Shown in pieces: positions 9,225 to 53,122 of a stretch of 64,000 bases of DNA. Under the pieces are notes generated by a model, which was given only the letters and a program-made list of their open reading frames with translations, was not told the origin of the DNA and ran no database searches. The DNA is taken from IMG/VR virus record IMGVR_UViG_3300046616_000314, positions 434,001-498,000 of that record, one strand, 5' to 3'. Both the position numbers and the translations under genes were made by a program. The stretch's first letter is position 1; each line of letters begins with the position of its first letter.

Positions 9225-9301
9225 GGCTCCTTAGCTCAGCGGATTAGAGCACGTGCCTTCTAAGCACGGGGTCGTTGGTTCGAATCCAACAGGAGTCGCC
9301 A
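9225..9301 (+). tRNA. tRNA-Arg (anticodon UCU) with encoded CCA
   Basis: Acceptor stem GGCTCCT/AGGAGTC, D arm GCTC..GAGC, anticodon arm CGTGC-CTTCTAA-GCACG, T loop TTCGAAT, 3' GCCA. Confidence 0.97.
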
Positions 9302-11850: not shown

Positions 11851-13167
11851 TTAGGCGAGAGCCTTTTGGACGATGTTGCCGTAATCAATCGTCGCGTCGA
11901 TGTTGCCGTAAACAACGACGGTCGGAACGCTTTCGACAATCGCCTTAGCCGCTGCGATCACGTCTTCCTTGGTCACGTCAGCGAAGTCTTGGGCGATTTC
12001 AGCCAGACCGCGAACTTCGCCGTTGTGGAACAGATCGGAAGCGATCTTTTGCGCCATACCGGTCGAACGATCTTCGATCTTGAAGATTTGCGTCACGACT
12101 TGGTTGCGAACGCGGTTCCAATCGGCATCAGCGATGATGCCCTTGGCAACCTTCGCCAGTTCACCAGCCGAGGATTCAAGGAATTCCGCAACCTTCGGAG
12201 CCGTGGTGGCGCCGTCGATGTAGAACAGGCTTCCTTGCGAGGACAGCGGATAGATGCCGGTTTGGACCGAATAGCAAAGCGAACGGGCTTCGCGAACTTC
12301 TTGGAACATGGGCGAGGACATGCCGCCGCCCAGCAGCAGAGCCAGCATCTTGTAGTTCAGGTGCGTCTTTTCGTACGGACCAGGGATGTACCACGAGGTA
12401 GTCACCGAGGGCTGTTCGAAGCGATCATCCACGACAGCAGCCGTGCCACCGACATATTGCACGGTTTCTTGCGGTTGTTGATTGCTGGCAGGAATGTCCG
12501 AGAAACGTTCGGCGGCTTCCTTCACGAACGTATCGTGATCGACATTACCCACACCGATCACGATCAGAGTGTCAGCGTGATAGTTGCGAGCCATGTAGTC
12601 GGTGATCATTTCGCGAGTGAACGACGCGACATTTTCGGTCGAACCCAGGATCGGACGACCAGCGGCTTGCGCCGGGAACGCGGTTCGGAACCACGTATCC
12701 ATGGCTTGCGAATCGAGTTGGTCGGCGTATTCGTTGATTTCCTGATGAACCACGATCTTTTCCGAGGCGATGTCGGCTTCGGTGAATGTGGAATTCGTCA
12801 GCACGTCGGACAGGATATCCAGGGCGACCGGAATATGCGACGCCAGACCGGTGACATGGTAGGCAGTCAGGTTGCGAGACGTGAAGGCGTTGATATCGGC
12901 GCCGATGGATTCGACTTCGTAGACGATATCCTTGGACGAACGGGCATTCGTGCCCTTGAATGCCATGTGTTCAAGGAAGTGCGAGATACCGTTTTCGGCT
13001 TCGACTTCGTTGTTGGCGCCGGTGTTGGCGAAGACAGCGACAGTGACGGTATTGATTGGCTTGGCGTATGTGGCGACGCGCAGACCATTGGGAAGGCGGC
13101 TAACCTTCACTTCGGTTGCGGTCGAAGCGAATTCTGCCAATGTGGCATTAAAATTTTTCGTAGTCAC
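11851..13167 (-). CDS. M16 family zinc peptidase (insulinase / processing-peptidase-like)
   Basis: GISHFLEHMAFKGT (HxxEH), INAFTS, GRPILG, LGGGMSSPMFQEVRE; AGGAG before a GTG start. Confidence 0.95.
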   Translation of the reverse strand: MTTKNFNATLAEFASTATEVKVSRLPNGLRVATYAKPINTVTVAVFANTGANNEVEAENGISHFLEHMAFKGTNARSSKDIVYEVESIGADINAFTSRNLTAYHVTGLASHIPVALDILSDVLTNSTFTEADIASEKIVVHQEINEYADQLDSQAMDTWFRTAFPAQAAGRPILGSTENVASFTREMITDYMARNYHADTLIVIGVGNVDHDTFVKEAAERFSDIPASNQQPQETVQYVGGTAAVVDDRFEQPSVTTSWYIPGPYEKTHLNYKMLALLLGGGMSSPMFQEVREARSLCYSVQTGIYPLSSQGSLFYIDGATTAPKVAEFLESSAGELAKVAKGIIADADWNRVRNQVVTQIFKIEDRSTGMAQKIASDLFHNGEVRGLAEIAQDFADVTKEDVIAAAKAIVESVPTVVVYGNIDATIDYGNIVQKALA

Positions 13168-13233
13168 TGAGACTCCTAACTCAAGAATGAACCCTTATCA
13201 TAGGGCTTTACGCTAATTTTCGTCAACTAAAAT

Positions 13234-15286: not shown

Positions 15287-16056
15287 TGTTTAAACTCACC
15301 GAAGGTATGCGCGCGGGTGACTTGGAAGACTTGGTTCTGCCTTTGCTCACAGTTGATGAATTCGTTAGTAAGCTAGATGATGACGCTATCGTTATTGGCT
15401 TTTATGTGCATGACAAAGATGCAGCCGACGACTTGAACCGTTTCTTGCAAAAATCACCTACCCAATACCTTGACACTGACATTTCCCCTGCCCCCGATCA
15501 GCACGGTTACTACCTCGTATTCGTGGAATTGATGAATGACAACACGATTGTCAAAAATATTGAAGACATTCTTCTTGAAGTTACTCCGTTGGTCAGTATC
15601 AAGGAATGGCAAATCCGTGTTCGCGGTCAGGAAAAAATCATGCCGTTCTCAAATAAATTCCTTGCAAAATATTTCACTCGTCTGCGAAATGAAAATGTCG
15701 AGAACGCGACACATGATACGGATGCCGGTGCTAGCGGAGACGACGAGATCGTTGAATTTTTGGAAGCCAGTGACCTTCTTGGAGCAAGTATCCAGGGTGG
15801 AAAGTTGATTCTAGAGGGCGCGTACACGAGCATTGAGGCGCAAGTTGTTGGATTTGGTGCGGTTGATGATCTAATAAAGAATCATAAACTTTTGGAGACT
15901 GCACTTAGCTTTGACTTTACTGGTGCAGCAGAATCCAGACGAATCACGATTATGATGGGCGAAGGTTGGGGCTACGTCCGTGCCGGTGACTTGTCAATCC
16001 TTGAAAAAAATGATTCTGGTCAAGCTATCTTGTTGCAAAACGCACGTTTGAGATAA
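15286..16056 (+). CDS. Hypothetical protein, probably late/virion
   Basis: 256-aa ORF with TAATG coupling; N-terminal LTEG. Confidence 0.8.
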   Translation: MFKLTEGMRAGDLEDLVLPLLTVDEFVSKLDDDAIVIGFYVHDKDAADDLNRFLQKSPTQYLDTDISPAPDQHGYYLVFVELMNDNTIVKNIEDILLEVTPLVSIKEWQIRVRGQEKIMPFSNKFLAKYFTRLRNENVENATHDTDAGASGDDEIVEFLEASDLLGASIQGGKLILEGAYTSIEAQVVGFGAVDDLIKNHKLLETALSFDFTGAAESRRITIMMGEGWGYVRAGDLSILEKNDSGQAILLQNARLR

Positions 16057-16159
16057 AGTCAATAGTGAAAATTCCTAACGCATGTTAATTTTCCCCCTTC
16101 CCGCCCGACATCGATAATGCAACTATCGGGTATGTAACGAGTTGGGAGGGGATAACCCC

Positions 16160-16513
16160 GTGTCACAAGCCGACGTTTTCAATGTGCCGTGTAACTGGCG
16201 CAATATCGTACGTTGGAGCGGCTTCAAAGAAAGTGTCGTTCCGTCAGCGTACGATTTCAGTGAAATCGATCAGCGTCCTCGTGTGGCAGTCCATGACAGT
16301 GATGTTTTGTTGCGAGTCCAACGGTTGGAGCATTGCCCGACCAAGGTCCGCGATTGGCTTAAACAACACGATATTGAGCATGTCACGTTCGGGCGTTTCG
16401 AAAAGAAAGATTTAGATTGGCGCACAGATTGTGCGTTTTTGGGGGTGAATTTCCGCCTTTCGTGCGATAGCGACGCCACATTCTTCAAAATGCGATGGCG
16501 TTGCTTCTGTTAA
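16160..16513 (+). CDS. Small hypothetical protein (FxDxxDAxxFKL family)
   Basis: GGGAGGGG RBS before GTG at 16160; C-terminal LSCDSDATFFKMRW. Confidence 0.7.
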   Translation: MSQADVFNVPCNWRNIVRWSGFKESVVPSAYDFSEIDQRPRVAVHDSDVLLRVQRLEHCPTKVRDWLKQHDIEHVTFGRFEKKDLDWRTDCAFLGVNFRLSCDSDATFFKMRWRCFC

Positions 16514-16599
16514 CAGCGATTACCGAATAAAATCCATACCAAAGTAGAAGATGGCTCTCAATAAATACTTGAGGGTCATTTTTTACATTTGGGTGTGGC

Positions 16600-16854
16600 G
16601 TGGATTTCATTATGGCATTACTGGAAGGGGCGGCGAAAGCTAAGAGCGGTTCGGAAGCTCTTATCGTCGTACTCGGGCTTGGCATAGCTTATTTTTATAC
16701 TGAGAACCGCTCACTACGAGCGGATATCAAGAAAAAAGATGAGAAGATGGACAAGATCATCGATGAATATTACAAGGGTAATATGACGCTAACCGAAGCG
16801 TTGAATTCCTTGAAACTAGTCCTATACGAACTGAAGGGTAAATTCAGAGTATAA
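16600..16854 (+). CDS. Single-TM coiled-coil protein, possible holin (BhlA-like topology)
   Basis: One TM segment then a charged coiled coil; upstream TAAATA; downstream terminator. Confidence 0.5.
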   Translation: MDFIMALLEGAAKAKSGSEALIVVLGLGIAYFYTENRSLRADIKKKDEKMDKIIDEYYKGNMTLTEALNSLKLVLYELKGKFRV

Positions 16855-16856
16855 GT

Positions 16857-16887
16857 AAAGCCCCGGTGAAAACCGGGGTTTTTCTTT
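16857..16887 (+). terminator. Intrinsic terminator
   Basis: AAAGCCCCGGT-GAAA-ACCGGGGTTTTT. Confidence 0.85.
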
Positions 16888-16977
16888 ATAGCATAACTCT
16901 ACCTATACATTTAGCGTGATATAATTTCATCAGTGTCACAATAAATAAATCTAGTTACCCCGACTGAGGTTAGTGTT

Positions 16978-18117
16978 GTGATTTGGCCCTTTAACGATTG
17001 GACGAAAGCACGCGAGAAACGCGAACGCGAAATATTGCGTGATATCAAGGTACTCGAAAGCCAACACGCCCTCTTGAACGCGGCGACGGAAACAGCCGAC
17101 GCAGCAAATGTTGTTACCCACACACTTAAGCAGCGTCTTGAAGATGCTGTTCATCAATTCCAAAGCACTGCACGTATCCTAAACGACGCCCTGATCATTT
17201 GTGATGCTACGGGTGCCATTCAAGCATTTAATCCAGCCGCCGAACGTTTGTTCGGCTTGTCAGCAGACGACGTACGCTCAACGCCGATTGGTGACTTGAT
17301 TTTATCGGATTGGCTGAATCTCACTGAGAACGATGAAGGCGTAGGAAAGCACTCGTCGGGTGAATTCCTACGCCTCGATATCAACCACACCCGTCTAGAA
17401 CGTTCAGACGGAAGCCTTATCGATCTGTTCGTGCTACGTCAGCGCATGACCGAACTGGAAAATTATAAATCAGTTTTCGAAACATCCTTCGACGGCATCC
17501 TTGTCGTCAAAAATCGCATGATCGTCGCCGCCAACTCTTCCATCGGAAAATTGTTCGGTTACGAAATTGACGATCTGCTTTCGAAGAACGTTGATATTCT
17601 TATCGCAGAGAAAGACCGGATGCTCTTGGGCGACCACATTGTCAACAGCAAGCTTCAAGGAACCCACCACGACGGCGGCAACCTGAACGTCTATTTCGCT
17701 GCGACACCGATCAAATGGGACTCCGAACCGGCGAGCCTCATTACGATCAAAAAGATTGCGGAAAGCCGCATGACCGCTCCTAGCTCACGTTTGATTTGTG
17801 GCTTCGGAGAAGATTTCAAAATCACTTTTGCTAACGCCGCGTTCGCGAAGCATTACAATGTCCAAAAGACCGATCTGCCAGGGATGGATATCCGAACCCT
17901 TCTCCCCGACAACGAGTGTGATCCATTCCTGATTCACATTTCCAGCCTCACTCCCGAAGAACCTAGCCGTAGAATGCAGCTTCAAACGAATGCCGCTGAC
18001 GGTACGTCTCGTTTACATGAGTGGACAGATTACGCCACGTTCGATGAAGATGGCGTAGAATATCAGCGCATCGGCAAAGATATTTCCAAGCGTTTCAATA
18101 CCAAAGATAATTTTTAA
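16978..18117 (+). CDS. Multi-PAS-domain protein with no output domain
   Basis: Three PAS-like segments: DALIICDATGAIQAFNPAAERLFG, FETSFDGILVV...ANSSIGKLFGY, ICGFGEDFKITFANAAF. Confidence 0.85.
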   Translation: MIWPFNDWTKAREKREREILRDIKVLESQHALLNAATETADAANVVTHTLKQRLEDAVHQFQSTARILNDALIICDATGAIQAFNPAAERLFGLSADDVRSTPIGDLILSDWLNLTENDEGVGKHSSGEFLRLDINHTRLERSDGSLIDLFVLRQRMTELENYKSVFETSFDGILVVKNRMIVAANSSIGKLFGYEIDDLLSKNVDILIAEKDRMLLGDHIVNSKLQGTHHDGGNLNVYFAATPIKWDSEPASLITIKKIAESRMTAPSSRLICGFGEDFKITFANAAFAKHYNVQKTDLPGMDIRTLLPDNECDPFLIHISSLTPEEPSRRMQLQTNAADGTSRLHEWTDYATFDEDGVEYQRIGKDISKRFNTKDNF

Positions 18118-23122: not shown

Positions 23123-23152
23123 ACAATTCCCTAAACTACGGATTTATTTAGT

Positions 23153-35498: not shown

Positions 35499-37826
35499 TT
35501 ATTCAGCAATTTCGGCGACTACCGCGACTTCAGGCGGCTTGGTAGCCGCGATAGGGGTCACGACGATCTTGTCTTCGACCACTCGCACCATGGCGATGCC
35601 GCCGTACGGAGTCAGTTCGCCGATCAGCATCATCTTGGAAAGCGGCTTCTTGATCGTTTCCTTGATCAGACGGTTCAACGGGCGGGCGCCCATCGCACGG
35701 TCGTAGCCGTTCTTGGCGAGCCACTGAACAGCAGCTTCATCAAGGTCCAGGGTGACGTTGCGTTCCTTCGCCATGTCTTCCAACTGACCGATGAACTTAT
35801 GGACAATCTTTTCCATATTTTCAGGAGCCAGGAAGTTGAACATGACCGTGGCGTCGAGGCGGTTGCGGAATTCGGGGCTGAAACGCTTCTCGATAGCCTT
35901 TTCCGCATCCTGCGTTTGTTGCTGACCACCGAAGCCCAGAGGGTTCTTAGCCAGCATTTCCGCGCCCGCGTTCGAAGTCAGGATCAGAATAATATTCTGG
36001 AACGAGACCGTCTTACCCGTCGAGTTGGACAGGCGACCATCGTCCATGACTTGAAGCAGGATGTTTTGAATGTCGGCGTGAGCCTTTTCAAATTCGTCCA
36101 GCAGGACCACGGCGCGCGGGTGATTATCCACTTCGTTGACCAGCTTGCCACCAGCCGCGCCACCTTCGCCGTGACCGACGTAGCCAGGAGGCGAGCCTAT
36201 CAGCTTAGCGACCGAATGCTTTTCCATGTATTCCGACATATCGTACTTGAGCATCGGAACGCCCAGCGTGTCAGCCAGGGCACGAGCGGTTTCGGTCTTA
36301 CCCGAACCGGTCGGACCAGCGAAGAGGTAGCAACCCGCCGTCTTGTTGGCTTCGCGCAGACCGGCACGGGCAATGTAAACGTCGGTTTCCAGGGCTTCGA
36401 TGGCTTGATCTTGACCGAAGACGCGAGCCCGAAGGTTCTTTTCCAAGTCCTTCAGGTTGTCTTGTTCATCACCCGAGACCTGTTGAGCCGGAATGTTGGC
36501 GACTTCGGAAATCTCGTACTCGATTTGCGCAACATCGATGATCTTGATGCGCTCGGCTTCCGGGGTGATACGCTGACGGGCGCCCGCGCCGTCGATCAGA
36601 TCAATCGACTTGTCGGGGTTCTTTTGACCGGTGATGTAGCGAGTCGAGAGATCAACCGCCGCATCAAGGGCTTCGTCGGTGTACGTAACTTCGTGGAACT
36701 TTTCGAAGGTTTCACGCAGACCGCGCAGGATCAGCTTGGTTTCCGCGATGGTCGGCTCATCAGCCGTGACCTTCTGGAAACGACGACGAAGGGCGGCGTC
36801 CTTGTCGAAATGCTTCTGATATTCGTCCAGGGTGGTCGAACCGATGCAACGCAGCGTGCCGCGAGCCAGGGCGGGCTTCAGCAGGTTCGCAACGTCCATG
36901 GTACCTTGGCTCGATGCCCCGGCGCCCATGATGTTGTGAATTTCGTCCACGAACAGAATGGAGCCTTCCACCATTTCCAGGGACTTGATGACTTGCTTCA
37001 TACGTTCTTCGAAATCACCACGGTACTTTGTACCGGCGATCAGATCAGCGATTTCGAGCGAATAGACCGTCGAAGCCTTCAGATTGTCGGGGACTTCGCC
37101 CTTGACGATCTTATATGCCAGACCTTCGGCGATGGCAGTCTTACCCACGCCAGCGTCACCGACGATCAGCGGGTTGTTCTTGCGGCGACGCGAAATGATT
37201 TGTTGGATGCGCAGTAGTTCGACCGAACGACCAATCAGCGGATCGATGCGACCAGCGACAGCTTCGGCGTTCAAATCCTTGGTGTACTTCTTCAGGATTT
37301 CCTTGGCGTCTTCCAAGGTCAGAACTTCCTTGGATTGCTGGATCGGCTCGCCATCGGGACCGACTTCACCATTGGGGCTCAGAATGCGGGCGATCTTGAG
37401 TTGAACGTCGGCGCCGCCGAACTTCTTGAGGACAGCGATAGCGTGGCTGTCGTCGTCATCGTGGCTGACCAGATGATAGAGAATGTGACCAGCCGTGGTG
37501 GCATTGGGCTGACCCTCGCGTTGCGAGAACATCGCGTGCGACACGGCGCGGGCGATAATGTGGTTGAAACCTTCCGAGGCGACCGGGCGACCACCCGAGA
37601 CCGGAATGATGCCGCTTTTTAGAATGCTTTCCAGAATCGGCGTCAGGTTGGTATCCGCCGGGGTCAGCACCTTGGACAAAATGTCCTGAACTTGCGGTTC
37701 TGCCAGGAGAGCCAGCAGAAGGTGTTCGGGAGTCACGTACTCATGGCGGTGCTTGACGGCAATGGCTTCGGCGCGGTGAATGTTCGCCAAAATTTCTTGA
37801 TGTTGGGGAGGCTGATTTTTAGACAT
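35499..37826 (-). CDS. clpA: ATP-dependent Clp protease ATPase subunit, ClpA-like
   Basis: [62 protein letters not shown] ClpP-docking loop; no ClpB middle domain. Confidence 0.93.
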
Positions 37827-38332
37827 TAATTAGCACCTTTAACCTTTTTACTACGACGTGTCTTCGCTCGCGTGAGAACCAAACGGCTTACCCGAGTTGT
37901 GAAACGAACCCCGTTCACATGATCATATTCGTGAGCATAGCACCGGGCGTTCATATCCGCAAACTTTTCGTTCACGAAAATTCCTTCCGCATTTTGGTAG
38001 CGGACTTCGATCCACGACGGACGATCCACGTCCAGCCAGAGATCGGGAAAGCTCAAGCATCCCTCTGCACCCTTGACGATATCATCACTGGTAGCCAGGA
38101 TTTCGGGATTGAAACAAGCGATAATTTGTTCCGAATCAGCCGGTTGCATGATGAACATACGAAACGGGAGACCGACTTGCGGTGCGGCAAGACCCATGCC
38201 GTTGAATTCGCGCATCACGGTAGTCATGGATTCTACCAGATACGACACGTCAAACGACGTGACTGAAAAATCGAACGGGTCGGTAGGTTCCTTGAGGATC
38301 GGATCATCCTCACTGACGAGCTTAAGCACCAT
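37826..38332 (-). CDS. def: Peptide deformylase
   Basis: GMGLAAPQVG, EGCLS, HEYDHVNG. Confidence 0.97.
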   Translation of the reverse strand: MVLKLVSEDDPILKEPTDPFDFSVTSFDVSYLVESMTTVMREFNGMGLAAPQVGLPFRMFIMQPADSEQIIACFNPEILATSDDIVKGAEGCLSFPDLWLDVDRPSWIEVRYQNAEGIFVNEKFADMNARCYAHEYDHVNGVRFTTRVSRLVLTRAKTRRSKKVKGAN

Positions 38333-38829
38333 TATCGCATACCATTCGCGTAGGTTTGGTTGACCATGGCGATACCACGGTCACGAAGGGCGTTGCACTG
38401 TGACACATTGCCCATGCTGATGTTCGCCTGCAAACTGCGACGAATATAATAGGTGTCGTTGAAGATCGCGTTGCGGATGTTTTGAGCTTCTTCGAAAGTC
38501 AGGACACCGCCCGAAGTGCGTTCATTCTTGGTGACACGGCGTGCCGCAGTACCGATGGCTTCACCCAGAGCATCTTCAGCGTGAATGCAGGCGATGATAT
38601 CTTGTTGGCTGACCGGGCGACGTTCCGAAATCGGACCCAGCGGGCGATTTTGATTTTCGTAGTCGATCTGGCGACGAGCGTGGTTGCATTGAATAGTGAC
38701 GCAACGACCAGCATCAATGGCATCGCCGAGAGATTCCGCGTCACTGATCCGCACCTGACCATGGGCTCGACCAGCGTTGGCGAGACCGATGAGGGCGATG
38801 AGAATCAGGACCGGAGCGGCAATACGCAT
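38332..38829 (-). CDS. Exported hypothetical protein
   Basis: Signal peptide ending AHG; four cysteines. Confidence 0.7.
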   Translation of the reverse strand: MRIAAPVLILIALIGLANAGRAHGQVRISDAESLGDAIDAGRCVTIQCNHARRQIDYENQNRPLGPISERRPVSQQDIIACIHAEDALGEAIGTAARRVTKNERTSGGVLTFEEAQNIRNAIFNDTYYIRRSLQANISMGNVSQCNALRDRGIAMVNQTYANGMR

Positions 38830-38885
38830 TAAAACCTCGTGAAAAATTTATCGTATGATCAAATTTAACACGAAATTCTCGTTTG

Positions 38886-39716
38886 TCAAGAGTTGGGAGG
38901 GTTTTTAAATGAACGAAGTATCGTTTTTTGTTCTTCTGATACATTATTAGGCAAAATAATGTTAACAACGATATGTAATGGACCAAAGATGTCAGTACGT
39001 CCCAAGGCAGGCATACCTTTACCATCAATAGTAATCATTGTTCCAGTTTGAACATCCGCCGGTAATTTGTACTGAATGTTTTCTCCACTCAGGGTGCGAA
39101 CCCAAAATGTGTCATTGATCATCGCGTCAACCGCATCAATGTCAGCACGGGTAAACAACTCGGTTCCCTGACGTTGGAACATACCATGTTCAGCAACGTG
39201 GATGATGACATACAAGTCGCCGGGAGGTAGTGACTTGTCGGCATCATCACCTAGACCCGTCATTTTCAATCGGGCTCCTGATTCAATACCGCGAGGAATG
39301 TTGAATTTGATTTCCCGATTCGCGGGAGCCCCTAGATTCATGGAAACCTCACCACCTTCAAACGCTTGTAAGAGCGTGACTTGATAATGAGTGGTGTAAT
39401 CCCGATTGGTGGGCTTAGGGGGCGGTCCAGGGTGTTGTTGATGCCAGAAATTCCGAAGGATGTCTTCAAAACTCGGGTTGTTCATATCAAAATGGAACTG
39501 GCGATTTCCACCCGATGATTGTTGGCGAAGACTATCGCGCGAAGCTTGATCTTTGATTTGATTATAAGCGTGCGTGACTTCTTCAAATTTTGCGCGAGCT
39601 TCATCAGTATTGTTAAGATCAGGATGATACTTCTTAGCCAAACCACGATAAGCGGTCTTGATAACATCATCGTTCGCATCTTGGGGAACGCCCAAGACGG
39701 CATAAGGATTGGTCAT
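38886..39716 (-). CDS. DnaJ/CbpA-type co-chaperone without zinc finger
   Basis: J domain with HPD; C-terminal GDLYV and GKGMP. Confidence 0.93.
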   Translation of the reverse strand: MTNPYAVLGVPQDANDDVIKTAYRGLAKKYHPDLNNTDEARAKFEEVTHAYNQIKDQASRDSLRQQSSGGNRQFHFDMNNPSFEDILRNFWHQQHPGPPPKPTNRDYTTHYQVTLLQAFEGGEVSMNLGAPANREIKFNIPRGIESGARLKMTGLGDDADKSLPPGDLYVIIHVAEHGMFQRQGTELFTRADIDAVDAMINDTFWVRTLSGENIQYKLPADVQTGTMITIDGKGMPALGRTDIFGPLHIVVNIILPNNVSEEQKTILRSFKNPPNS

Positions 39717-40518: not shown

Positions 40519-40591
40519 ACTCGTATTTAGCGTTGACAAATCTCTATTCTAGGATAGTATGAAGTCATTGATTTGATAGAGGATTGCTAAA

Positions 40592-41080
40592 ATGATTGGT
40601 TTCATCATCGGCGGCGTGTTCTTTAGCATTCTGTTTTTTGTGTTCCGCAAGGCGATCTTCTGGTTTCTGATCATCACAGTTGTCCTCACGGCAATCGCCA
40701 TGATGTTCAACTCGACGCTCGGCGGCGCCCAGAAAAATCAACCTCTCGATAAAGTTATTTCGACGCTGCACCCCACGGAACACACGGATAAATCCCTGTC
40801 GGCTATCCTTACGGTCACGAATAACTCGAATTATTCGGTCAAGACGATTAACGTTCGCTGCACAGGCACGACCTTCGGCGGTGAAAATGTCTCGGAAATC
40901 ATGCTTCTTCCTATCTCGTTCGAAGTGGCTCCGCACGAAATCAAGAGCACGACTTTGAGCGGTGCTATCTTGACGAGCCAAAGCGTGTGCGAGACTACGG
41001 CGTTTGCAAGCTGGAATCGCAACAAGAAAGACGCTGGTAGTTATATCGATGATATGACTGCATGGATGAATGCACACTAA
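40592..41080 (+). CDS. Hypothetical membrane protein
   Basis: Two N-terminal TM segments and a beta-rich domain; promoter-like TTGACA at 40533. Confidence 0.7.
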   Translation: MIGFIIGGVFFSILFFVFRKAIFWFLIITVVLTAIAMMFNSTLGGAQKNQPLDKVISTLHPTEHTDKSLSAILTVTNNSNYSVKTINVRCTGTTFGGENVSEIMLLPISFEVAPHEIKSTTLSGAILTSQSVCETTAFASWNRNKKDAGSYIDDMTAWMNAH

Positions 41081-41084
41081 GAGT

Positions 41085-41780
41085 CATAAGGGAGGCTTAG
41101 CCTCCCAATGAGACTGGACAAACGCTAACGCGCCTATCCAGTCTCTATCTCTTAATGAGTAATATTTCTTTTTATATCATGCACAGGAAGTAATTCACTT
41201 TCTCTCCCCCTTGAAAACAATACACCTGTAGAAAGGTATAATGCTCCAAGGGGAAGAAATAAGATGATGCACTCTCGCTCATCGCTCAATAAGCGGCTAA
41301 CCCACTTTACGTAGGTAGATGGCGGTTTCCCTGTACCATCATGTTGCCGCCCAATCTCGATATTCTAACTCACCCTATCTAAGGGGCTTTGGGGCTGTTG
41401 CTGGTGTGCGTCGATACGCCTTTTTCACCAACAGACCTTGTGCTCTGGTAGTTATTTTATAATCAAACGGTTATGAAATGTAATTTCACTCTTATACGCC
41501 GCGCTATTGAGGGACGGGCGTATACGGATAGTTGCCAAACTGTTGAAGGCATAGCTATCCTCTTTATTAAGTGCCTTTTTGCGAAAACTCTGTTCGCTGA
41601 GCAGCCGTCAATACATCACCCCTGCTATGGTGTGTAGAATCCGTCTCATTCGGTCGCGTTCCTATCGGGCTCGGTCTATACTTCCCGGCTGGATGGTTGG
41701 GTCGGAGTGAAACCCTTTTAACTCCTACGCGAATTATGGCTAGACAACAGAACCAAATGGTTCTATAAATTTCTAGAGTC
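41085..41780 (-). ncRNA. Candidate large structured non-coding RNA (~700 nt), family unknown
   Basis: No ORF of 60 aa or more lies within it; at least ten stem-loops; wobble pairs resolve as G-U on the minus strand; upstream TTGACA-N18-TATTAA. Confidence 0.65.
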
Positions 41781-41813
41781 CTTTAATAGAATCCTTTGGG
41801 GTATCCTGTCAAT

Positions 41814-42185
41814 ATGAATCGTGTAATTCTCGGTAAATTCGAACAAGGACGCCAAGCTAAGTGGATTTGTACTGCTGATATGGCAGGAATGCCGAAAAAT
41901 AGGCTCGAATATTTTTGCGATCTGATGTTCTTGTACGACGACGATCCCGATCAAGTCGCGATCCGAGGCGGCGTTTTCTTCCGGGTCATCAAGAATCGGA
42001 ACAGTGATCCCGAAACGGCTGCGGTGTTTGAGAAGTTCTCCCGCGCGTTTCCCACCATGCCGGTATATTACCTAGGATCATCGATAGGCACTGATCCCAA
42101 AGATTTCACGAAAAATTTGATGCCCTCGTTCCTCATCACCACCGATGAGCAACGGACCTATTTCAAACTGCTGTTTGGAGTTTAA
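41814..42185 (+). CDS. Small hypothetical protein (FxDxxDAxxFKL family)
   Basis: C-terminal LITTDEQRTYFKLLFGV; probable ATG at 41814. Confidence 0.7.
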   Translation: MNRVILGKFEQGRQAKWICTADMAGMPKNRLEYFCDLMFLYDDDPDQVAIRGGVFFRVIKNRNSDPETAAVFEKFSRAFPTMPVYYLGSSIGTDPKDFTKNLMPSFLITTDEQRTYFKLLFGV

Positions 42186-42229
42186 ACCATAGATAAATAG
42201 TATTAACGCCTAATATAAAGGAAAATACT

Positions 42230-42412
42230 ATGGCTAAGGTTGTTGAAGAAGTATACGTAGTTCGTTTGAGCAAGCTTGTTAAGGGCGACAGTGTTGACGC
42301 ACTTTCCCCGAAGGGCTTCGTTGATAATGTCGAAGCGATTCTAGGCGAACTCGTTGGGGACGCGGGCGTTATTGTCGAAGTTGAGGTACTGGATTCCGGC
42401 GATAGCGAATGA
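42230..42412 (+). CDS. Small conserved phage protein
   Basis: MAKVVEEVYVVRLSKLVK; AAGGA RBS and TAAATA upstream. Confidence 0.7.
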   Translation: MAKVVEEVYVVRLSKLVKGDSVDALSPKGFVDNVEAILGELVGDAGVIVEVEVLDSGDSE

Positions 42413-42880
42413 TCTGACATACTGACGTTCGATATCTTCGACCATCAATTTGAAATTGATAGCGGCTTCGCCAGGGATATCGGACTTCAGTTTGTTAAAA
42501 TAATCGCCAATGAGGGATTGCCAGACCTGACGAATGCTGTTCGCTAGGTCTGCCTCTGACTTGGAATCTTCAATCTCGGCGTGCGACGACGGCAACTTAA
42601 GATGCTCGATCACCTTTTCACGGGTGCGAGTATCCACCAGTTTCCATAGATGACTCAGAAGATCAGTTTCCGTGTAGAATTTCGGCGGGTCTTCTTTAGA
42701 CAGGCGCCGTGTCAAAAAAATACAGAACATGCGATACGGGATCGGAATGCCTCTCATAAAGATGAGCGTTTCGATCTCGCCGCTTTCGCATACGAGGGTA
42801 TCGACTACCAAACCCTTATCGCGCACGATGCTACCGATCATGCCATTTTCGAGCATTTCTGAAGTCAGTTCGGTAATCAT
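42341..42880 (-). CDS. Hypothetical protein
   Basis: ATGA-coupled to the nucleotidyltransferase gene. Confidence 0.6.
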   Translation of the reverse strand: MITELTSEMLENGMIGSIVRDKGLVVDTLVCESGEIETLIFMRGIPIPYRMFCIFLTRRLSKEDPPKFYTETDLLSHLWKLVDTRTREKVIEHLKLPSSHAEIEDSKSEADLANSIRQVWQSLIGDYFNKLKSDIPGEAAINFKLMVEDIERQYVRSFAIAGIQYLNFDNNARVPNEFA

Positions 42881-43500
42881 CCGTAATCTTCTTCTTTACC
42901 GCACGTAAGATCGTCTTCAAACATAGTCCCGAAGGCGGGATCATTGATATTCATGATCTGAGCCAACATCCCCGGCGTGGGTGTAAAACCATAGCTGCAA
43001 TATTTTCCCAAACGCTTAGGCTTAGGCTTCGAATATTTCAATTTCGAAGTCAGCAACTTATTCTTCAAATGCGGCAAGCACTCGGGATCATAAAGAATTT
43101 CTTCCCCATCCGTGACGAATTTGGTCACGCTGAAGTCGTATCGATACAGAATCTCTTCCGCCGATTTCGGGAAATGCTTGCAATGGAGTTGAACGTTGAA
43201 GGGTTCACGCCCACCGACTGCGGTTGTCGTGCCATTCGTGCCGCCAGGAAACGGATATAAGTTCGGTGCGAACTGGCGCAAAAATTCCGCGCCCCAATTA
43301 TACATTTCAAGCGACGGAAAATAGACATCAATGTCCCCGCCGCTCTCGCATTCTGAGTTTTGAAAGACACGACGCGCAGCCCCACCGGCAATCCACGGAC
43401 CATTGTCCATGGTGAGGTACGGGAAAAACAACCGGATAGCCTTTAGGTGCTTCCGATCATGAAATTCCGGGTCAATCGCGGCGCGGATAAAATTCGTCAT
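42877..43500 (-). CDS. Nucleotidyltransferase (CCA-adding/poly(A) polymerase head-like)
   Basis: WIAGGAARR...GDIDVYF...YDFSV matches the class II NTase GG-x-R, DxD, RDF-like layout. Confidence 0.75.
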   Translation of the reverse strand: MTNFIRAAIDPEFHDRKHLKAIRLFFPYLTMDNGPWIAGGAARRVFQNSECESGGDIDVYFPSLEMYNWGAEFLRQFAPNLYPFPGGTNGTTTAVGGREPFNVQLHCKHFPKSAEEILYRYDFSVTKFVTDGEEILYDPECLPHLKNKLLTSKLKYSKPKPKRLGKYCSYGFTPTPGMLAQIMNINDPAFGTMFEDDLTCGKEEDYG

Positions 43501-43544
43501 TTTCTTCAATTACGGAATTATCGCAGGGGTGTCAAGCATTTCGG

Positions 43545-50272: not shown

Positions 50273-53122
50273 ATGGCTAATATCAAGAACTTCGGTATGA
50301 TTGGTGTTGGCTCGGACGTTCAGTTTGGTAAGGGCGGCGTAAAGCTCGTCTCGACCAACGGAACATTCGCTGCCAAGGACGCACAAGGTAATGCCTTTGT
50401 TCGTTTCCAAATCGCCGATGGTAACAGCGCATCCGACGCCGTTACATATTCGCAGTTGCAAGCGACTGCGAACGCCGTTGCTGATAGCGTAGCAAACGCT
50501 GTCGATGGCGTTCAAAATGAACTGGACCTGACTCAAGCGGGTGCTGGTCTGGATACCGATGGTTCGTATATCGCCCCAGTCGGTTCGTTCTATCTGAACA
50601 ACACCACAAGCCTCGCCAACGCAATTTTCGCGTTGGACACTCAAGCATTCAACGAAGCCAACGCCCGCGCGACTGCGGACGCTGAATTCGCTAACGCCCT
50701 GGCTGATGCGACCGCGAACGCGCTGTCGTTGCAAGCTGAAATCGACCAAATCGAAACTTCGGTTGGTCTGGGTCTTGATGGCACTCTGACTCTGGCTGCT
50801 GGCAACTATCTCGCCAACGCAGTTGATATCGTCAACGCAATCGAAACTTTGGATGGCGTTCTGGGTAACACCGCCACTGAAGCCGCTGCTGCCAACGCAA
50901 CTGCTACCGCTGCTAACGCCGCTGTCTCCGCTGTCGTTTCTGATCTGGCTAACACCAATGCAGAAGTTGCATCGGTTAATGCTACTGTTGAAGCTCTTTC
51001 GACCACTGTTACTGCTATTGCTGACAGCCTTGACGCTCTGAGCGACAACGTTGCAACCAACACTGCTGACATCGCAACCAACGCTGCTTCGATTGCAAAC
51101 ACCAATGCCGACGTTGCTAATACCAACGCTGACGTTGCTGCCCTGACCGCAAACGCTGTCCTGAAGGACGGTTCGGTTGCTTTCACTGGCGCAATGAGCA
51201 TGGGCAACAACGTCATTCACGACGTTGCTACTCCGGTTCTGGGTACTGATGCCGCTAACCGCGACTTCGTTATGCAAACAGTTGGCGAACTGGGTAACGC
51301 ATTCAACTACGTTGGATCGCTACCTGAACTGTTCGGTACCTTCCCGGTTTCGGGCGATGGTTTGACCGCTAACACCGCGTTCGATCTGGGTGAATTCCCG
51401 CCGGAAGGTCAAAATGCCGGTGACTACTATAAGGTTACTGCTGAAGGTTTCTATAAGGTCGGCGCCAATACTGCTGTCCTGTTTGAACCGAACGATGGTC
51501 TCGTATTCAACGCCATCGGTGATATCGATAAGATCGACAACCAATCGTCGGTCGTTCTGGGTACTCCTGGCGAAATCGACGTTACTGGTAGCGCATCGAC
51601 CGGCTTCACCGTTGGTATCGATGATAGCTATACACTAGCTCGCCAACAAGAAGTTTCGGATTCGGCTAACGTTGCTGCTACTGCTACTGCTGCGGTTGCT
51701 TCTGATCTGGCTAACACCAATGCCGACGTTGCTGCTGTTGTTTCCGATCTGGCAAACACCAACGCTGACGTTGCTGCGGTTGCTGCTGATCTGGTAAGCA
51801 CTAATGCAAACGTTGTCACTCTGACAGGTGTTGTTTCCGGTAACTCGGCAAACATCGCTCTGCTGCAAGGCGACATCGCTAACGCTGCTGGTGATTTGGC
51901 TGCTGAAACTGCTGCCCGTATCCAAGGCGACAGCGACAACGCTAACGCGATTGCTTCGACCAACGCCAACGTCACTTCGCTGGCTGGTAACGTTGCTACG
52001 ATCAGCAACAACGTTGATGCATTGATTCTTGAACTCAATACCGTCGAAACCGGCGCCGGTCTGGAAACAGACGGTTCGTATTCGGCTAATGCACTGTCGC
52101 ACTATCTGGCTAACGCTACAAGCCTGAAGACTGCTGACGAAGCTCTGGATACTGCGATCTATGATCTGGCTCAATCGCTGACCACTCTTTCGCAAGACGA
52201 AATCAAGACTGAAGACAACCTCAACTCGGTTAAGGTCGAAGCTGACAAAATCGGTTTCAATCTGAACGTTGGTGGTGTTAAGACTGAAGTTGGTTCGATC
52301 CTCGCTGATGCAAACACCAACACAACCGCTACCCTCGATCTGACCACTGCTGGTGAAGTTCACCTTGCGGCTGGCGGTGCAAGCACAGACGTTGATCTGC
52401 GCCTGTCGGGTAAGGGTGCTGGTCAAGTCATCATCGGTGAAACCGGAACTGGTTTCATTCAAGCTGACGCTGGTTATGACCTGAACGTTGCTGGTGGTGA
52501 TGGTGCTGCGCTGAACCTGATGGGTACAGCGGTCAACATTTCCTCGGGTGAAGGCGATGCGATCATGTCGTTCGTTGGCGTTGCCAACGCAACTGCTTCG
52601 TTCGTTGCCACAAACGGTACAACTGACGTTACTTTCGCCGCTACTGGCGCGGGTGCAAACATCGATATCGTTCTGGACCCGAAGGGTACAGGTACTATCA
52701 ATGCTTCGTCGTCGCGCATCGTCTCGGTTGCTAACGCTGTTAGCGCAAACGACGCTGTTAACAAGGGTCAACTGGATACCGCGATTGCTACCGCAACCGT
52801 TGGTGTTGTTAAGACCGTTGTTCTGTCGATTGTTGAAGTCGATGGTACATACGACATCGGTCAAATTGCCGGTACTGTTCTGCAAACTCGTACTTTGGTC
52901 ACAGGTGGCTTCGGTCCCGGTGCTGCCATCGTCATCGGTTCGACAGCTACTCCGAACGAACTAGCGTCGGCTGCTGATATTGATGAATCTGCTGCTGGCA
53001 TCTACGTTGTAGAAACAGTTAAGGACTACGGTTCGCCGACAATGCTGACTGTTACCGTCACTGGCTCTGCCATTGCCGGAACCGGCGCCGCGAAGGTAAT
53101 CGTTGAATATCTGTCTGCGTAA
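50273..53122 (+). CDS. Long coiled-coil fibre protein (module A, ANTNADVA heptads)
   Basis: Ala/Asn-rich heptads; DAVTYSQL, DAANRDFV and DAVNKGQL neck motifs; strong RBS, TAAATA and terminator. Confidence 0.85.
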   Translation: MANIKNFGMIGVGSDVQFGKGGVKLVSTNGTFAAKDAQGNAFVRFQIADGNSASDAVTYSQLQATANAVADSVANAVDGVQNELDLTQAGAGLDTDGSYIAPVGSFYLNNTTSLANAIFALDTQAFNEANARATADAEFANALADATANALSLQAEIDQIETSVGLGLDGTLTLAAGNYLANAVDIVNAIETLDGVLGNTATEAAAANATATAANAAVSAVVSDLANTNAEVASVNATVEALSTTVTAIADSLDALSDNVATNTADIATNAASIANTNADVANTNADVAALTANAVLKDGSVAFTGAMSMGNNVIHDVATPVLGTDAANRDFVMQTVGELGNAFNYVGSLPELFGTFPVSGDGLTANTAFDLGEFPPEGQNAGDYYKVTAEGFYKVGANTAVLFEPNDGLVFNAIGDIDKIDNQSSVVLGTPGEIDVTGSASTGFTVGIDDSYTLARQQEVSDSANVAATATAAVASDLANTNADVAAVVSDLANTNADVAAVAADLVSTNANVVTLTGVVSGNSANIALLQGDIANAAGDLAAETAARIQGDSDNANAIASTNANVTSLAGNVATISNNVDALILELNTVETGAGLETDGSYSANALSHYLANATSLKTADEALDTAIYDLAQSLTTLSQDEIKTEDNLNSVKVEADKIGFNLNVGGVKTEVGSILADANTNTTATLDLTTAGEVHLAAGGASTDVDLRLSGKGAGQVIIGETGTGFIQADAGYDLNVAGGDGAALNLMGTAVNISSGEGDAIMSFVGVANATASFVATNGTTDVTFAATGAGANIDIVLDPKGTGTINASSSRIVSVANAVSANDAVNKGQLDTAIATATVGVVKTVVLSIVEVDGTYDIGQIAGTVLQTRTLVTGGFGPGAAIVIGSTATPNELASAADIDESAAGIYVVETVKDYGSPTMLTVTVTGSAIAGTGAAKVIVEYLSA

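What the first reader, a model, noticed from the sequence alone, without database searches (positions are those of the whole stretch)
41085..41812. Candidate novel ~700-nt structured non-coding RNA on the minus strand
Seen: this is the only long ORF-free gap in an otherwise wall-to-wall coding window, and it is tiled with stem-loops (41090-41106, 41110-41145, 41205-41254, 41318-41340, 41393-41437, 41493-41524, 41526-41560, 41581-41597, 41612-41636, 41704-41725, 41749-41764, plus a longer-range TCGCGT/ACGCGA pairing around 41654/41732). In three stems the imperfect pairs are G-U on the minus strand and A-C on the plus strand. An example is GAGACTGGATAGGCGC-GTTA-GCGTTTGTCCAGTCTC, a continuous 16-bp stem with 3 G-U pairs. 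A TTGACA-N18-TATTAA element (41812-41783) points into the region on the same strand. Established: phages carry large ncRNAs of this size with unknown function (GOLLD, ROOL classes). Inference: this is a folded RNA gene, and I did not recognise tmRNA, RNase P or group I/II intron hallmarks in it.
Basis: partly seen in the sequence, partly recalled or inferred. Interest (0 to 1): 0.85.

Follow-up and report, generated by a model that had tools for sequence, protein, structure and literature searches.

The report
Non-coding gap with one hairpin cluster
A 733-base gene-free gap in a giant soil phage is truly non-coding, but only its left ~200 bases fold unusually well (best on the minus strand), so it is a small hairpin-rich RNA element of untested function, not a shown 700-base giant RNA.

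Summary
The gap 41081-41813 is real. It is the only ORF-free stretch over 260 nt in the window, has stops of all three kinds in all six frames, and has negative codon scores throughout. No Rfam family, tRNA or tmRNA matches it.

The claim that it is tiled with significant stem-loops holds for only one quarter of it. Measured against this phage's own sequence, 41275-41812 folds no better than average (z -0.1 minus, -0.4 plus). The left end, 41086-41275, is the most extreme 190-nt stretch of the window on the minus strand (z -6.4, 0 of 660 as low).

That left module consists of four hairpins, from about 41295 down to 41090. They carry 10 G-U pairs on the minus strand and none on the plus strand. 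None has the U-run that this phage's clear terminators have.

The contig is a 561-kb rhizosphere megaphage with no close relatives. Both flanking proteins are orphans, so covariation could not be tested. No RNA run was listed, so transcription could not be tested either.

Best reading (confidence 0.38): a leftward non-coding or antisense transcript that ends in a stable hairpin domain, inside an orphan accessory island. A GOLLD/ROOL-like giant RNA is not supported.

The parts
41081..41813 (.). Non-coding gap between two rightward orphan genes
   Evidence: No ORF of 60 aa or more. Stops of all three kinds in all six frames. Codon LLR negative in all frames. No gene called by JGI.
41090..41106 (-). 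H_C: 7-bp G+C-rich hairpin with a 3-nt loop, 9 nt past the stop codon of the 162-aa gene. It folds equally well on both strands.
   Evidence: -13.6 kcal/mol (minus) and -13.9 (plus); 1 of 200 shuffles as good. No U-run on either side.
41110..41145 (-). H_B: continuous 16-bp hairpin with 3 G-U pairs on the minus strand. On the plus strand it is a 9-bp stem plus an internal loop.
   Evidence: -29.0 (z -10.0) on minus against -18.8 on plus.
41146..41197 (-). A+U-rich, mostly unpaired linker between H_A and H_B
   Evidence: Largely unpaired in the MFE and centroid folds.
41198..41262 (-). H_A: 25-bp hairpin with 5 G-U pairs, one U-U mismatch and one bulge. There is no U-run after it.
   Evidence: -33.5 (z -7.3) on minus against -19.4 on plus.
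41276..41295 (-). H0: 8-bp hairpin with 2 G-U pairs, just 5' of the domain
   Evidence: Present in both the MFE and centroid folds of 41060-41300.
41067..41274 (-). Predicted closed domain. Two closing helices (41268-41274 with 41067-41073, and 41149-41157 with 41075-41083) enclose H_A, H_B and H_C. The 3' side overlaps the last codons and the stop codon of the 162-aa gene in antisense.
   Evidence: 41060-41300 minus folds at -105.5 kcal/mol, z -9.1. The 190-nt core has z -6.4 against the phage background, with 0 of 660 windows as low. The closing helices are prediction only.
41783..41812 (-). Sigma-70-like promoter candidate pointing into the gap. It has a perfect TTGACA, then TCTATT after 16 nt or TATTAA after 18 nt.
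   Evidence: Read. Not listed by the promoter scan. It is one of about 8 TTGACA sites with a 4-of-6 or better -10; by my reading most of these lie in or near intergenic DNA.
41753..41799 (.). 17-nt inverted repeat (41753-41769 / 41783-41799) and an 11-nt direct repeat (41774-41784 / 41787-41797), just upstream of the 123-aa gene. Operator-like, or a 5' hairpin.
   Evidence: I2, D2. The hairpin 41735-41780 scores -13.7, with 2 of 200 shuffles as good.
41517..41667 (.). Stretch identical to a 151-nt contig from an estuary metagenome (run X2)
   Evidence: 0 differences in 151 nt. The same run's contig on the neighbouring gene (41934-42080) has 7 differences in 147 nt. Fisher p = 0.0066. This rests on one contig each.
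41403..41425 (+). First plus-strand terminator-like site after the 162-aa gene (6-bp stem followed by UUUUU)
40592..41080 (+). Left flank: 162-aa orphan protein with two predicted N-terminal membrane helices (my reading of the sequence). It has its own TTGACA-16-TAGTAT promoter at 40533-40560.
   Evidence: Codon LLR +36.1 against -20.0 for the overlapping minus-strand ORF. Only itself in the protein library. Promoter.
41814..42185 (+). Right flank: 123-aa orphan protein with a weak ribosome-binding site
   Evidence: Only itself in 5.8 billion clusters and 1.84 billion representatives. Codon LLR +7.8.

Best explanation
The gap holds a leftward (minus-strand) non-coding transcription unit inside an island of orphan accessory genes.

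The solid part is a hairpin domain of about 210-230 nt at the left end (about 41295 down to 41067). In RNA 5'-to-3' order it runs H0, H_A (25 bp), an A+U-rich linker, H_B (16 bp) and H_C (7 bp). It is well formed only as minus-strand RNA.

I infer that transcription starts near 41776 from the TTGACA promoter-like site. It would run antisense between the two rightward genes and end in this domain. The domain would act as the 3'-end-forming and nuclease-resistant element, possibly with RNase III processing at the 25-bp stem. The product would be either a roughly 710-nt RNA whose 5' 500 nt are loosely folded, or a stable 3' fragment of about 200 nt.

The most likely action is in cis by antisense pairing. 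One target would be rightward read-through from the 162-aa membrane-protein gene, which has no canonical terminator before about 41425. The other would be the leader of the 123-aa gene.

Shown: the stretch is non-coding; the left end is exceptionally structured; the structure is biased to the minus strand; no known RNA family matches.
Inferred: transcription, the transcript ends, processing and the antisense role.
For: - Non-coding.
- The left module is the strongest local fold of the whole 64 kb. The 70-nt window minimum is -42.6 on the minus strand. The 190-nt GC-corrected z is -6.4, with 0 of 660 windows as low. The 241-nt fold has z -9.1.
- Strand: H0, H_A and H_B carry 10 G-U pairs on the minus strand and none that would be G-U on the plus strand, p = 0.002. 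Energies are -85.1 (minus) against -61.4 (plus) for the 190 nt.
- These are not ordinary terminators. The six clear terminators of this phage (23151-, 32191-, 35431-, 53101+, 56301 both strands, 59821 both strands) all have a G+C hairpin followed by a U-run. H_A, H_B and H_C do not.
- A perfect -35 hexamer points into the gap at 41812.
- The gap is about three times longer than any other ORF-free stretch in a tightly packed genome.
- One read-length contig of a related phage is identical over 41517-41667, while the neighbouring gene differs at 7 of 147 positions.
Against: - There is no transcript evidence. No RNA run was listed.
- There are no homologues, so no covariation test was possible.
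- The -10 element is poor and the site is not significant by the scan.
- The 500 nt between the promoter and the hairpin domain fold no better than average sequence.
- The plus-strand fold of the left module is itself unusual (z -2.9, rank 2 of 660), so a role in the 3' UTR of the 162-aa mRNA is not excluded.
- Strand differences of 8-18 kcal/mol in 70-nt windows are common among the window's strongest folds, and by my reading of the gene map they do not track the coding strand. The energy asymmetry alone is therefore weak, and the G-U count carries the strand argument.
- G-T wobble pairs would also favour this strand as single-stranded DNA.
Confidence: 0.38

Rival explanations
1. There is no dedicated RNA gene. 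The gap is a regulatory spacer in a variable accessory island. The left hairpins are the 3' UTR and end-forming structure of the rightward 162-aa mRNA, possibly acting in both directions. The right part carries the promoter and operator of the 123-aa gene.
For: - Both flanking genes are rightward.
- H_C sits 9 nt after the stop codon and folds equally well on both strands.
- On the plus strand the 9-bp base of H_B is followed by UAUCUCUU.
- The plus-strand fold of the module ranks 2 of 660.
- An inverted repeat, a direct repeat and a TATAAAT string lie 15-60 nt upstream of the 123-aa start codon.
- The remaining 538 nt have only background-level structure.
Against: - All 10 wobble positions in H0, H_A and H_B are mismatches on the plus strand.
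- This phage's clear terminators, including the bidirectional ones, have A- and U-runs that are missing here.
- 733 nt is far more than promoter-plus-terminator spacers need. Other intergenic gaps in the window are 260 nt or less at the 60-aa ORF threshold.
Confidence: 0.27
2. This is the reader's model: one large (about 700 nt), globally folded ncRNA of the GOLLD/ROOL type on the minus strand.
For: - Whole-region z is -8.4 on the minus strand.
- The region is non-coding and lies in a phage.
- A promoter-like site and the hairpin cluster bracket about 710 nt.
- The central 151 nt are identical in one read of a related phage.
Against: - With the left 190 nt removed, the fold is ordinary. z is -2.9 against a background mean of -1.46 (sd 1.27), and the GC-corrected rank is 105 of 232.
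- No Rfam family scores better than E about 0.6, and the few hits are hairpin-shaped microRNA models far below their thresholds.
- No conserved relatives were found anywhere searched.
Confidence: 0.08
3. It is a DNA-level element. The hairpins would form in single-stranded DNA of one strand, as at a single-strand initiation site, an origin or a packaging signal, at the junction between the leftward and rightward gene blocks.
For: - Folded with DNA parameters the module is still significant: z -5.6 (minus) and -4.3 (plus).
- G-T wobble pairs would give the same strand bias in single-stranded DNA.
- The gap lies where gene orientation switches.
- An A+T-rich stretch lies between the hairpins.
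Against: - There are no iterons or tandem repeats.
- There is no GC-skew turn at 41 kb.
- G-T pairs add little stability in DNA, and the DNA-parameter strand difference is small: -34.5 against -30.2.
Confidence: 0.08
4. It is a small hydrophobic peptide gene, or a type I toxin-like mRNA. The 45-codon minus-strand ORF 41289-41152 lies inside the closed fold, and its product has an apparently membrane-spanning hydrophobic stretch.
For: - The ORF starts in H0 and ends in the closing helix.
- The tight fold is reminiscent of translationally silenced toxin mRNAs such as hok. That comparison rests on established knowledge and was not tested here.
- The site is next to lysis genes.
Against: - Codon LLR is -22.6 over 45 codons.
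- The start codon is TTG with no Shine-Dalgarno sequence.
- The hydrophobic-then-charged pattern follows automatically from a pyrimidine-rich 5' arm and a purine-rich 3' arm.
- There are no Pfam or PHROG hits.
Confidence: 0.05
5. It is decayed or recently acquired DNA with no function, for example a remnant of a lost gene or a mobile element, with hairpins that arose by chance.
For: - It lies in an island of orphan genes (40592-42880) with no relatives.
- Most of the gap is statistically featureless.
Against: - The 16-bp and 25-bp hairpins have z of -10.0 and -7.3, with all wobble pairs on one strand.
- There is no trace of protein similarity.
- The centre of the gap is identical in a related phage whose adjacent gene has diverged 5%.
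Confidence: 0.1

Closest known systems
GOLLD and ROOL large ncRNAs (phage- and prophage-associated, about 580-800 nt)
   Same: Located in a phage, hundreds of nucleotides without an ORF, function unknown.
   Different: No covariance-model match of any strength. Excess structure is confined to about 200 nt. No family of relatives exists to show a conserved multi-domain fold.
Phage cis-antisense and small RNAs (lambda OOP, P22 sar, P1/P7 c4 type; named from established knowledge)
   Same: A short non-coding transcript opposite to, and overlapping the end of, a neighbouring gene. Hairpin-rich, and placed in a regulatory intergenic region.
   Different: Those RNAs are 70-200 nt and end in a canonical terminator. 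Here no U-run terminator is present, the candidate unit would be about 710 nt, and no transcript has been shown.
RNase III processing hairpins of T7-type phage transcripts (from established knowledge)
   Same: Long (20 bp or more), imperfect intergenic hairpins without a U-run. H_A has 25 bp with a small internal mismatch.
   Different: T7 sites lie between genes on the coding strand. Here the hairpins are optimal on the strand opposite to both neighbours. Cleavage was not tested.
Intrinsic (including bidirectional) terminators
   Same: A G+C-rich hairpin directly after a stop codon (H_C), stable on both strands.
   Different: It has no U-run and no A-run. This phage's six clear terminators have them, and the scan lists no terminator at 41090-41262.
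Type I toxin-antitoxin mRNAs (hok/sok-like)
   Same: A compact fold closed between its 5' and 3' ends, around a short ORF with one hydrophobic segment.
   Different: Codon score is strongly negative and there is no ribosome-binding site. No antitoxin promoter was identified.

Membership tests
Any Rfam 15 family (including large phage ncRNAs, RNase P, tmRNA, group I/II introns, riboswitches, ribozymes) | Covariance-model score at or above the family's gathering threshold | tested here: not met
   Only a tRNA at 9225-9298 passes in the whole window. With permissive filters on the gap, the best hits are microRNA-precursor and CRISPR-DR57 models at 14-16 bits against thresholds of 39-245.
tRNA / tmRNA | Cloverleaf or tRNA-like domain with a tag reading frame, as detected by ARAGORN | tested here: not met
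   ARAGORN finds only tRNA-Arg at 9225-9301.
Structured ncRNA gene (generic) | Folding energy beyond the genomic background over the whole proposed gene | tested here: not met
   41275-41812 has z of -0.1 and -0.4 against the phage background, and its shuffle z lies within the coding-window range. Only 41086-41275 is exceptional.
Structured ncRNA gene (generic) | Compensatory base changes (covariation) among homologues | not testable with these tools
   No homologue was found in the phage collection, viral contigs, metagenome contigs or genome contigs. The flanking proteins are orphans.
Structured ncRNA gene (generic) | A discrete transcript on the proposed strand | not testable with these tools
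   No RNA run was listed for this sequence. The two DNA runs show presence only.
Intrinsic terminator | G+C-rich stem-loop followed directly by a U-run | tested here: not met
   The scan lists no site at 41090-41262 on either strand. The phage's own terminators do show the U-run.
Protein-coding gene (standard or stop-recoded) | An open frame, or a frame interrupted by only one kind of stop, with the phage's codon usage | tested here: not met
   12-17 stops per frame, of all three kinds. Codon LLR is negative in all frames. There are no family hits for the stop-free pieces.
CRISPR array / type III toxin-antitoxin RNA / iteron origin | Regularly spaced direct repeats | tested here: not met
   No tandem repeats. 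Only 9-12-nt two-copy matches were found.
Sigma-70 promoter for the minus-strand unit | -35 and -10 hexamers with 16-18-nt spacing, including the conserved A at position 2 and T at position 6 of the -10 | tested here: inconclusive
   The -35 is perfect. The -10 is TCTATT (no A at position 2) at 16 nt, or TATTAA (no T at position 6) at 18 nt. The site is not listed by the scan, whose overall yield equals that of shuffles.

The most novel reading that the evidence does not exclude
The gap might encode a previously unseen phage RNA, either a large ncRNA or a stable hairpin RNA of about 200 nt, that acts in trans. One possibility is a decoy or inhibitor of a host defence. This reading draws on its position in an island of orphan genes, about 1.1 kb from a Gad2-family (anti-Gabija-like) nucleotidyltransferase gene (Gad2 is described in bioRxiv 10.1101/2023.05.01.538930). 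Nothing here tests it. It is simply not excluded.
Probability: 0.07. Interest if true: 0.7.

Novelty: new member of a known kind. Interest (0 to 1): 0.3.

Why it matters
If a minus-strand RNA is made here, it would be one of very few non-coding RNAs described for megaphages. It would also lie in a counter-defence-type accessory island, which would make it worth a Northern blot or RNA-seq look.

As it stands, the useful result is a correction. The impressive whole-region z-score comes from about 200 nt. The rest of the gap folds like ordinary phage sequence. The lineage is so isolated that the usual comparative proof of an RNA gene is out of reach.

Tried and rejected
- **Recoded or broken gene:** rejected.
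- **Known RNA family:** none found. No tRNA or tmRNA.
- **Homologues by DNA:** blastn against 50,697 phage records found no match. A 20-mer from 41532-41551 in metagenome contigs gave two chance hits with no further similarity. A degenerate H_B pattern found only the source contig in viral contigs and nothing in genome contigs.
- **Homologues by synteny:**
  - The 123-aa and 162-aa proteins find only themselves.
  - The 60-aa and 179-aa proteins have no phage match.
  - The DnaJ-like and 210-aa proteins find only the source contig in viral contigs.
  - The nearest DnaJ-like relatives (34% identity; L007, L008) and Phosso have no gap beside the DnaJ/ClpA genes.
  - Atu_ph07 has two unannotated stretches at the matching place. 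One holds a tRNA-Ser and an apparent HNH-type ORF (my reading of the sequence, not searched). Neither resembles our region or folds well.
- **Paralogues in the window:** none.
- **RNA-seq:** no run was listed. The DNA runs gave only the source sample and two read-length contigs from an estuary sample.
- **Shared late-promoter motif around TATAAAT:** an alignment of the five sites shows nothing conserved.
- **Target search:** pairing the A+U-rich linker against 64 translation-start regions gave no convincing outlier, and the analysis was crude.
- **Origin-type features:** no repeats or skew turn.
- **Not done:** a covariance model of the left module was not built, because there were no sequences worth scanning with it.

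Full report
**Source and setting**

The window is part of IMGVR_UViG_3300046616_000314 (JGI Ga0495668_0000005), a 561-kb phage contig from a rhizosphere metagenome. Its ClpA-like protein is 47% identical to those of the jumbo phages Atu_ph07 and Phosso. The best relatives of its DnaJ-like protein reach only 34% identity. The lineage is therefore isolated.

The gene order around the finding is as follows:
- ClpA, peptide deformylase, a 165-aa protein, DnaJ-like protein, o-spanin and i-spanin, all leftward, ending at 40539.
- A rightward 162-aa membrane protein (40592-41080).
- The gap (41081-41813).
- A rightward 123-aa protein (41814-42185) and a rightward 60-aa protein (42230-42412).
- Leftward 179-aa and 207/210-aa proteins.
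- Rightward structural genes from 43577.

JGI's gene calls agree with this map and leave the gap empty.

**Is the gap really non-coding?**

Yes.
- At a 60-aa threshold the gap is the only ORF-free stretch over 260 nt in 64 kb.
- Each of the six frames has 12-17 stops, and all three stop codons occur in every frame. Stop-codon reassignment cannot rescue a gene.
- A codon-usage score trained on 22 long genes is negative in every frame from 41050 to 41800. It is positive in the expected frames of the flanking genes.
- The nine stop-free pieces of 38 aa or more hit nothing in PHROGs and only noise in Pfam.

**Is it tiled with significant structure?**

Only in part. The whole 728 nt fold at -249.9 kcal/mol on the minus strand (z -8.4) and -227.5 on the plus strand (z -5.4).

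Splitting the region changes the picture. For 41275-41812 (538 nt), shuffle z is -2.9 (minus) and -2.0 (plus). Twenty ordinary coding windows of the same size give mean -1.46, sd 1.27 and minimum -4.7. On a GC-corrected comparison with all same-length windows, this part ranks 105 and 71 of 232, with z of -0.1 and -0.4.

In contrast, 41086-41275 (190 nt) has z -6.4 on the minus strand, with none of 660 windows as low, and z -2.9 on the plus strand. In a 70-nt scan of the window, the lowest energy anywhere is at 41071-41180 on the minus strand (-42.6). The next window, 41191-41270, gives -33.5. Nothing else in the gap passes -27.

- 41090-41106, 41110-41145, 41198-41262 and 41490-41526, each with at most 1 of 200 shuffles as good.
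- 41735-41780, with 2 of 200 as good.

The other seven, including the long-range TCGCGT/ACGCGA pairing, are matched or beaten by 4 to 33 of 200 shuffles.

**Anatomy of the left module on the minus strand**

In RNA 5'-to-3' order the module contains:
- H0 (41295-41276): 8 bp, 2 G-U pairs.
- H_A (41262-41198): 25 bp, 5 G-U pairs, one U-U mismatch and one bulge.
- An A+U-rich linker of about 50 nt.
- H_B (41145-41110): 16 continuous bp, 3 G-U pairs.
- H_C (41106-41090): 7 bp, G+C-rich.

The 241-nt fold (z -9.1) also predicts two closing helices that reach into the last codons and the stop codon of the 162-aa gene. Those are prediction only.

All 10 wobble positions are G-U on the minus strand and A-C mismatches on the plus strand (sign test p = 0.002). 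Accordingly, H_A drops from -33.5 to -19.4 and H_B from -29.0 to -18.8 on the plus strand.

One caution applies. Among the strongest 70-nt folds elsewhere in the window, strand differences of 8-18 kcal/mol are common. By my reading of the gene map they do not follow the coding strand. The G-U count, not the energy gap, is therefore the real strand evidence. G-T wobbles would give the same bias for hairpins in single-stranded DNA.

**Are the hairpins just terminators?**

This phage's clear terminators are textbook ones, each a G+C hairpin plus a U-run. They lie at 23151 (minus), 32191 (minus), 35431 (minus), 53101 (plus), 56301 (both strands) and 59821 (both strands).

H_A, H_B and H_C have no such run, and the scan lists no terminator there on either strand. 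The first plus-strand terminator-like site after the 162-aa gene is at 41403-41425. Rightward transcripts may therefore cross the whole module.

**Promoter**

The -10 is TATTAA at 18 nt or TCTATT at 16 nt, and both lack an invariant position. The scan does not list the site, and its overall yield equals that of shuffles.

It is one of about eight TTGACA sites with a usable -10, and by my reading most of these lie in or near intergenic DNA. Another of them is a good one in front of the 162-aa gene. It counts as a candidate only.

Just inside it lie a 17-nt inverted repeat and an 11-nt direct repeat (41753-41799), upstream of the 123-aa gene.

**Known families**

Rfam 15 gives nothing at gathering thresholds except a tRNA elsewhere in the window. 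With permissive filters, only generic hairpin models far below threshold appear. ARAGORN finds no tmRNA. There are no direct or tandem repeats.

**Relatives**

None could be found.
- blastn against the phage records found nothing.
- The 123-aa protein matches only itself in 5.8 billion clusters and in 1.84 billion representatives scored by HMMER. The 162-aa protein also matches only itself.
- The 60-aa and 179-aa neighbours have no phage match.
- Pattern scans of the metagenome, viral and genome collections gave chance hits or the source contig only.
- Distant relatives that share the DnaJ/ClpA block have no comparable element there.

The block 40592-42880 is thus an island of orphan genes between two conserved modules. 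Covariation, the decisive test, cannot be run.

**Sequencing runs**

No RNA run was listed. Of two DNA runs, one is probably the source sample. The other is an estuary metagenome that holds one 151-nt contig identical to 41517-41667 and one with 7 differences over 41934-42080. Fisher p is 0.0066.

This hints that the centre of the gap is at least as constrained as the neighbouring gene. It rests on two read-length contigs, and mosaic divergence could also explain it.

**Interpretation**

The evidence supports a real, strand-biased RNA-type hairpin domain of about 200 nt at the left end of a truly non-coding gap.

My preferred reading (confidence 0.38) is a leftward non-coding or antisense transcript that ends in this domain. 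The domain would serve as a 3'-end and stability element, with possible RNase III processing. The RNA would act in cis on the two rightward neighbours.

The main rival (0.27) is a regulatory spacer whose hairpins belong to the 3' UTR of the 162-aa mRNA. The remaining readings are:
- A DNA-level element: 0.08.
- A small hydrophobic peptide or type I toxin-like mRNA: 0.05 (codon score -22.6).
- Functionless remnant DNA: 0.10.

**Novelty and score**

There is no known family and there are no relatives. The kind of element, a phage intergenic hairpin-rich antisense or processing RNA, is familiar. The specific claim of a giant structured RNA is not borne out. Interest is 0.3.

Noticed in passing
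window 42877-43509 (-): The 207/210-aa nucleotidyltransferase-like protein carries a precomputed Pfam PF26128 (Gad2, anti-Gabija) hit in the source annotation. The local Pfam copy gives no hit. PHROGs gives phrog_4400 and a nucleotidyltransferase family. It is about half the length of the described Gad2, which is 400 aa.
   Followed up: partly
window 40592-42880: This is an island of four orphan genes (162, 123, 60 and 179 aa) plus the gap. It lies between the conserved DnaJ/ClpA/spanin block and the structural module, and none of the four has any detectable relative.
   Followed up: partly
window 16514-16600 (+): A second long, strand-biased hairpin (about 23 bp; -33.0 on plus against -14.6 on minus) lies in a short gap between rightward genes. 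It is similar in style to H_A and has no separate U-run. The surrounding 16017-17108 has the lowest GC-corrected plus-strand MFE of the window.
   Followed up: partly
window 42341-42412: The rightward 60-aa gene (codon score +20) and the leftward 179-aa gene overlap convergently by 72 nt.
   Followed up: no
window 35499-39716 (-): The megaphage carries a ClpA-like ATPase, a peptide deformylase and a DnaJ-like chaperone side by side. The same cluster is seen in Phosso, and without the deformylase in Atu_ph07 and two metagenome contigs.
   Followed up: partly
L004:11452-12745 (Atu_ph07 229450-230745): The stretch without annotated proteins in Atu_ph07 holds a tRNA-Ser(gct) at L004:12507-12599 that is not in the feature table shown. 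By my reading of the folded sequence, it also holds an HNH-type ORF and a small cysteine-rich ORF.
   Followed up: partly
window 35799-37217 (+), 51635-52885 (-), 40565-41077 (-), 11866-13170 (+): Very long 'shadow' ORFs (170-472 aa) lie antisense to real genes in this phage. Those scored (35799-37217, 51635-52885 and 40565-41077) have negative codon scores. ORF length alone is therefore a poor guide to genes here.
   Followed up: partly
window 1536-2263: This 728-nt stretch has no ORF of 80 aa or more, only 60-80-aa ORFs. It was not examined for coding potential or structure.
   Followed up: no
window 41517-41667 and 41934-42080: An estuary metagenome (run X2, 2025) holds read-length contigs of a close relative of this rhizosphere phage. 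One is identical within the gap, and the other is 95% identical within the 123-aa gene. The one difference listed there, at 42005, is synonymous.
   Followed up: partly
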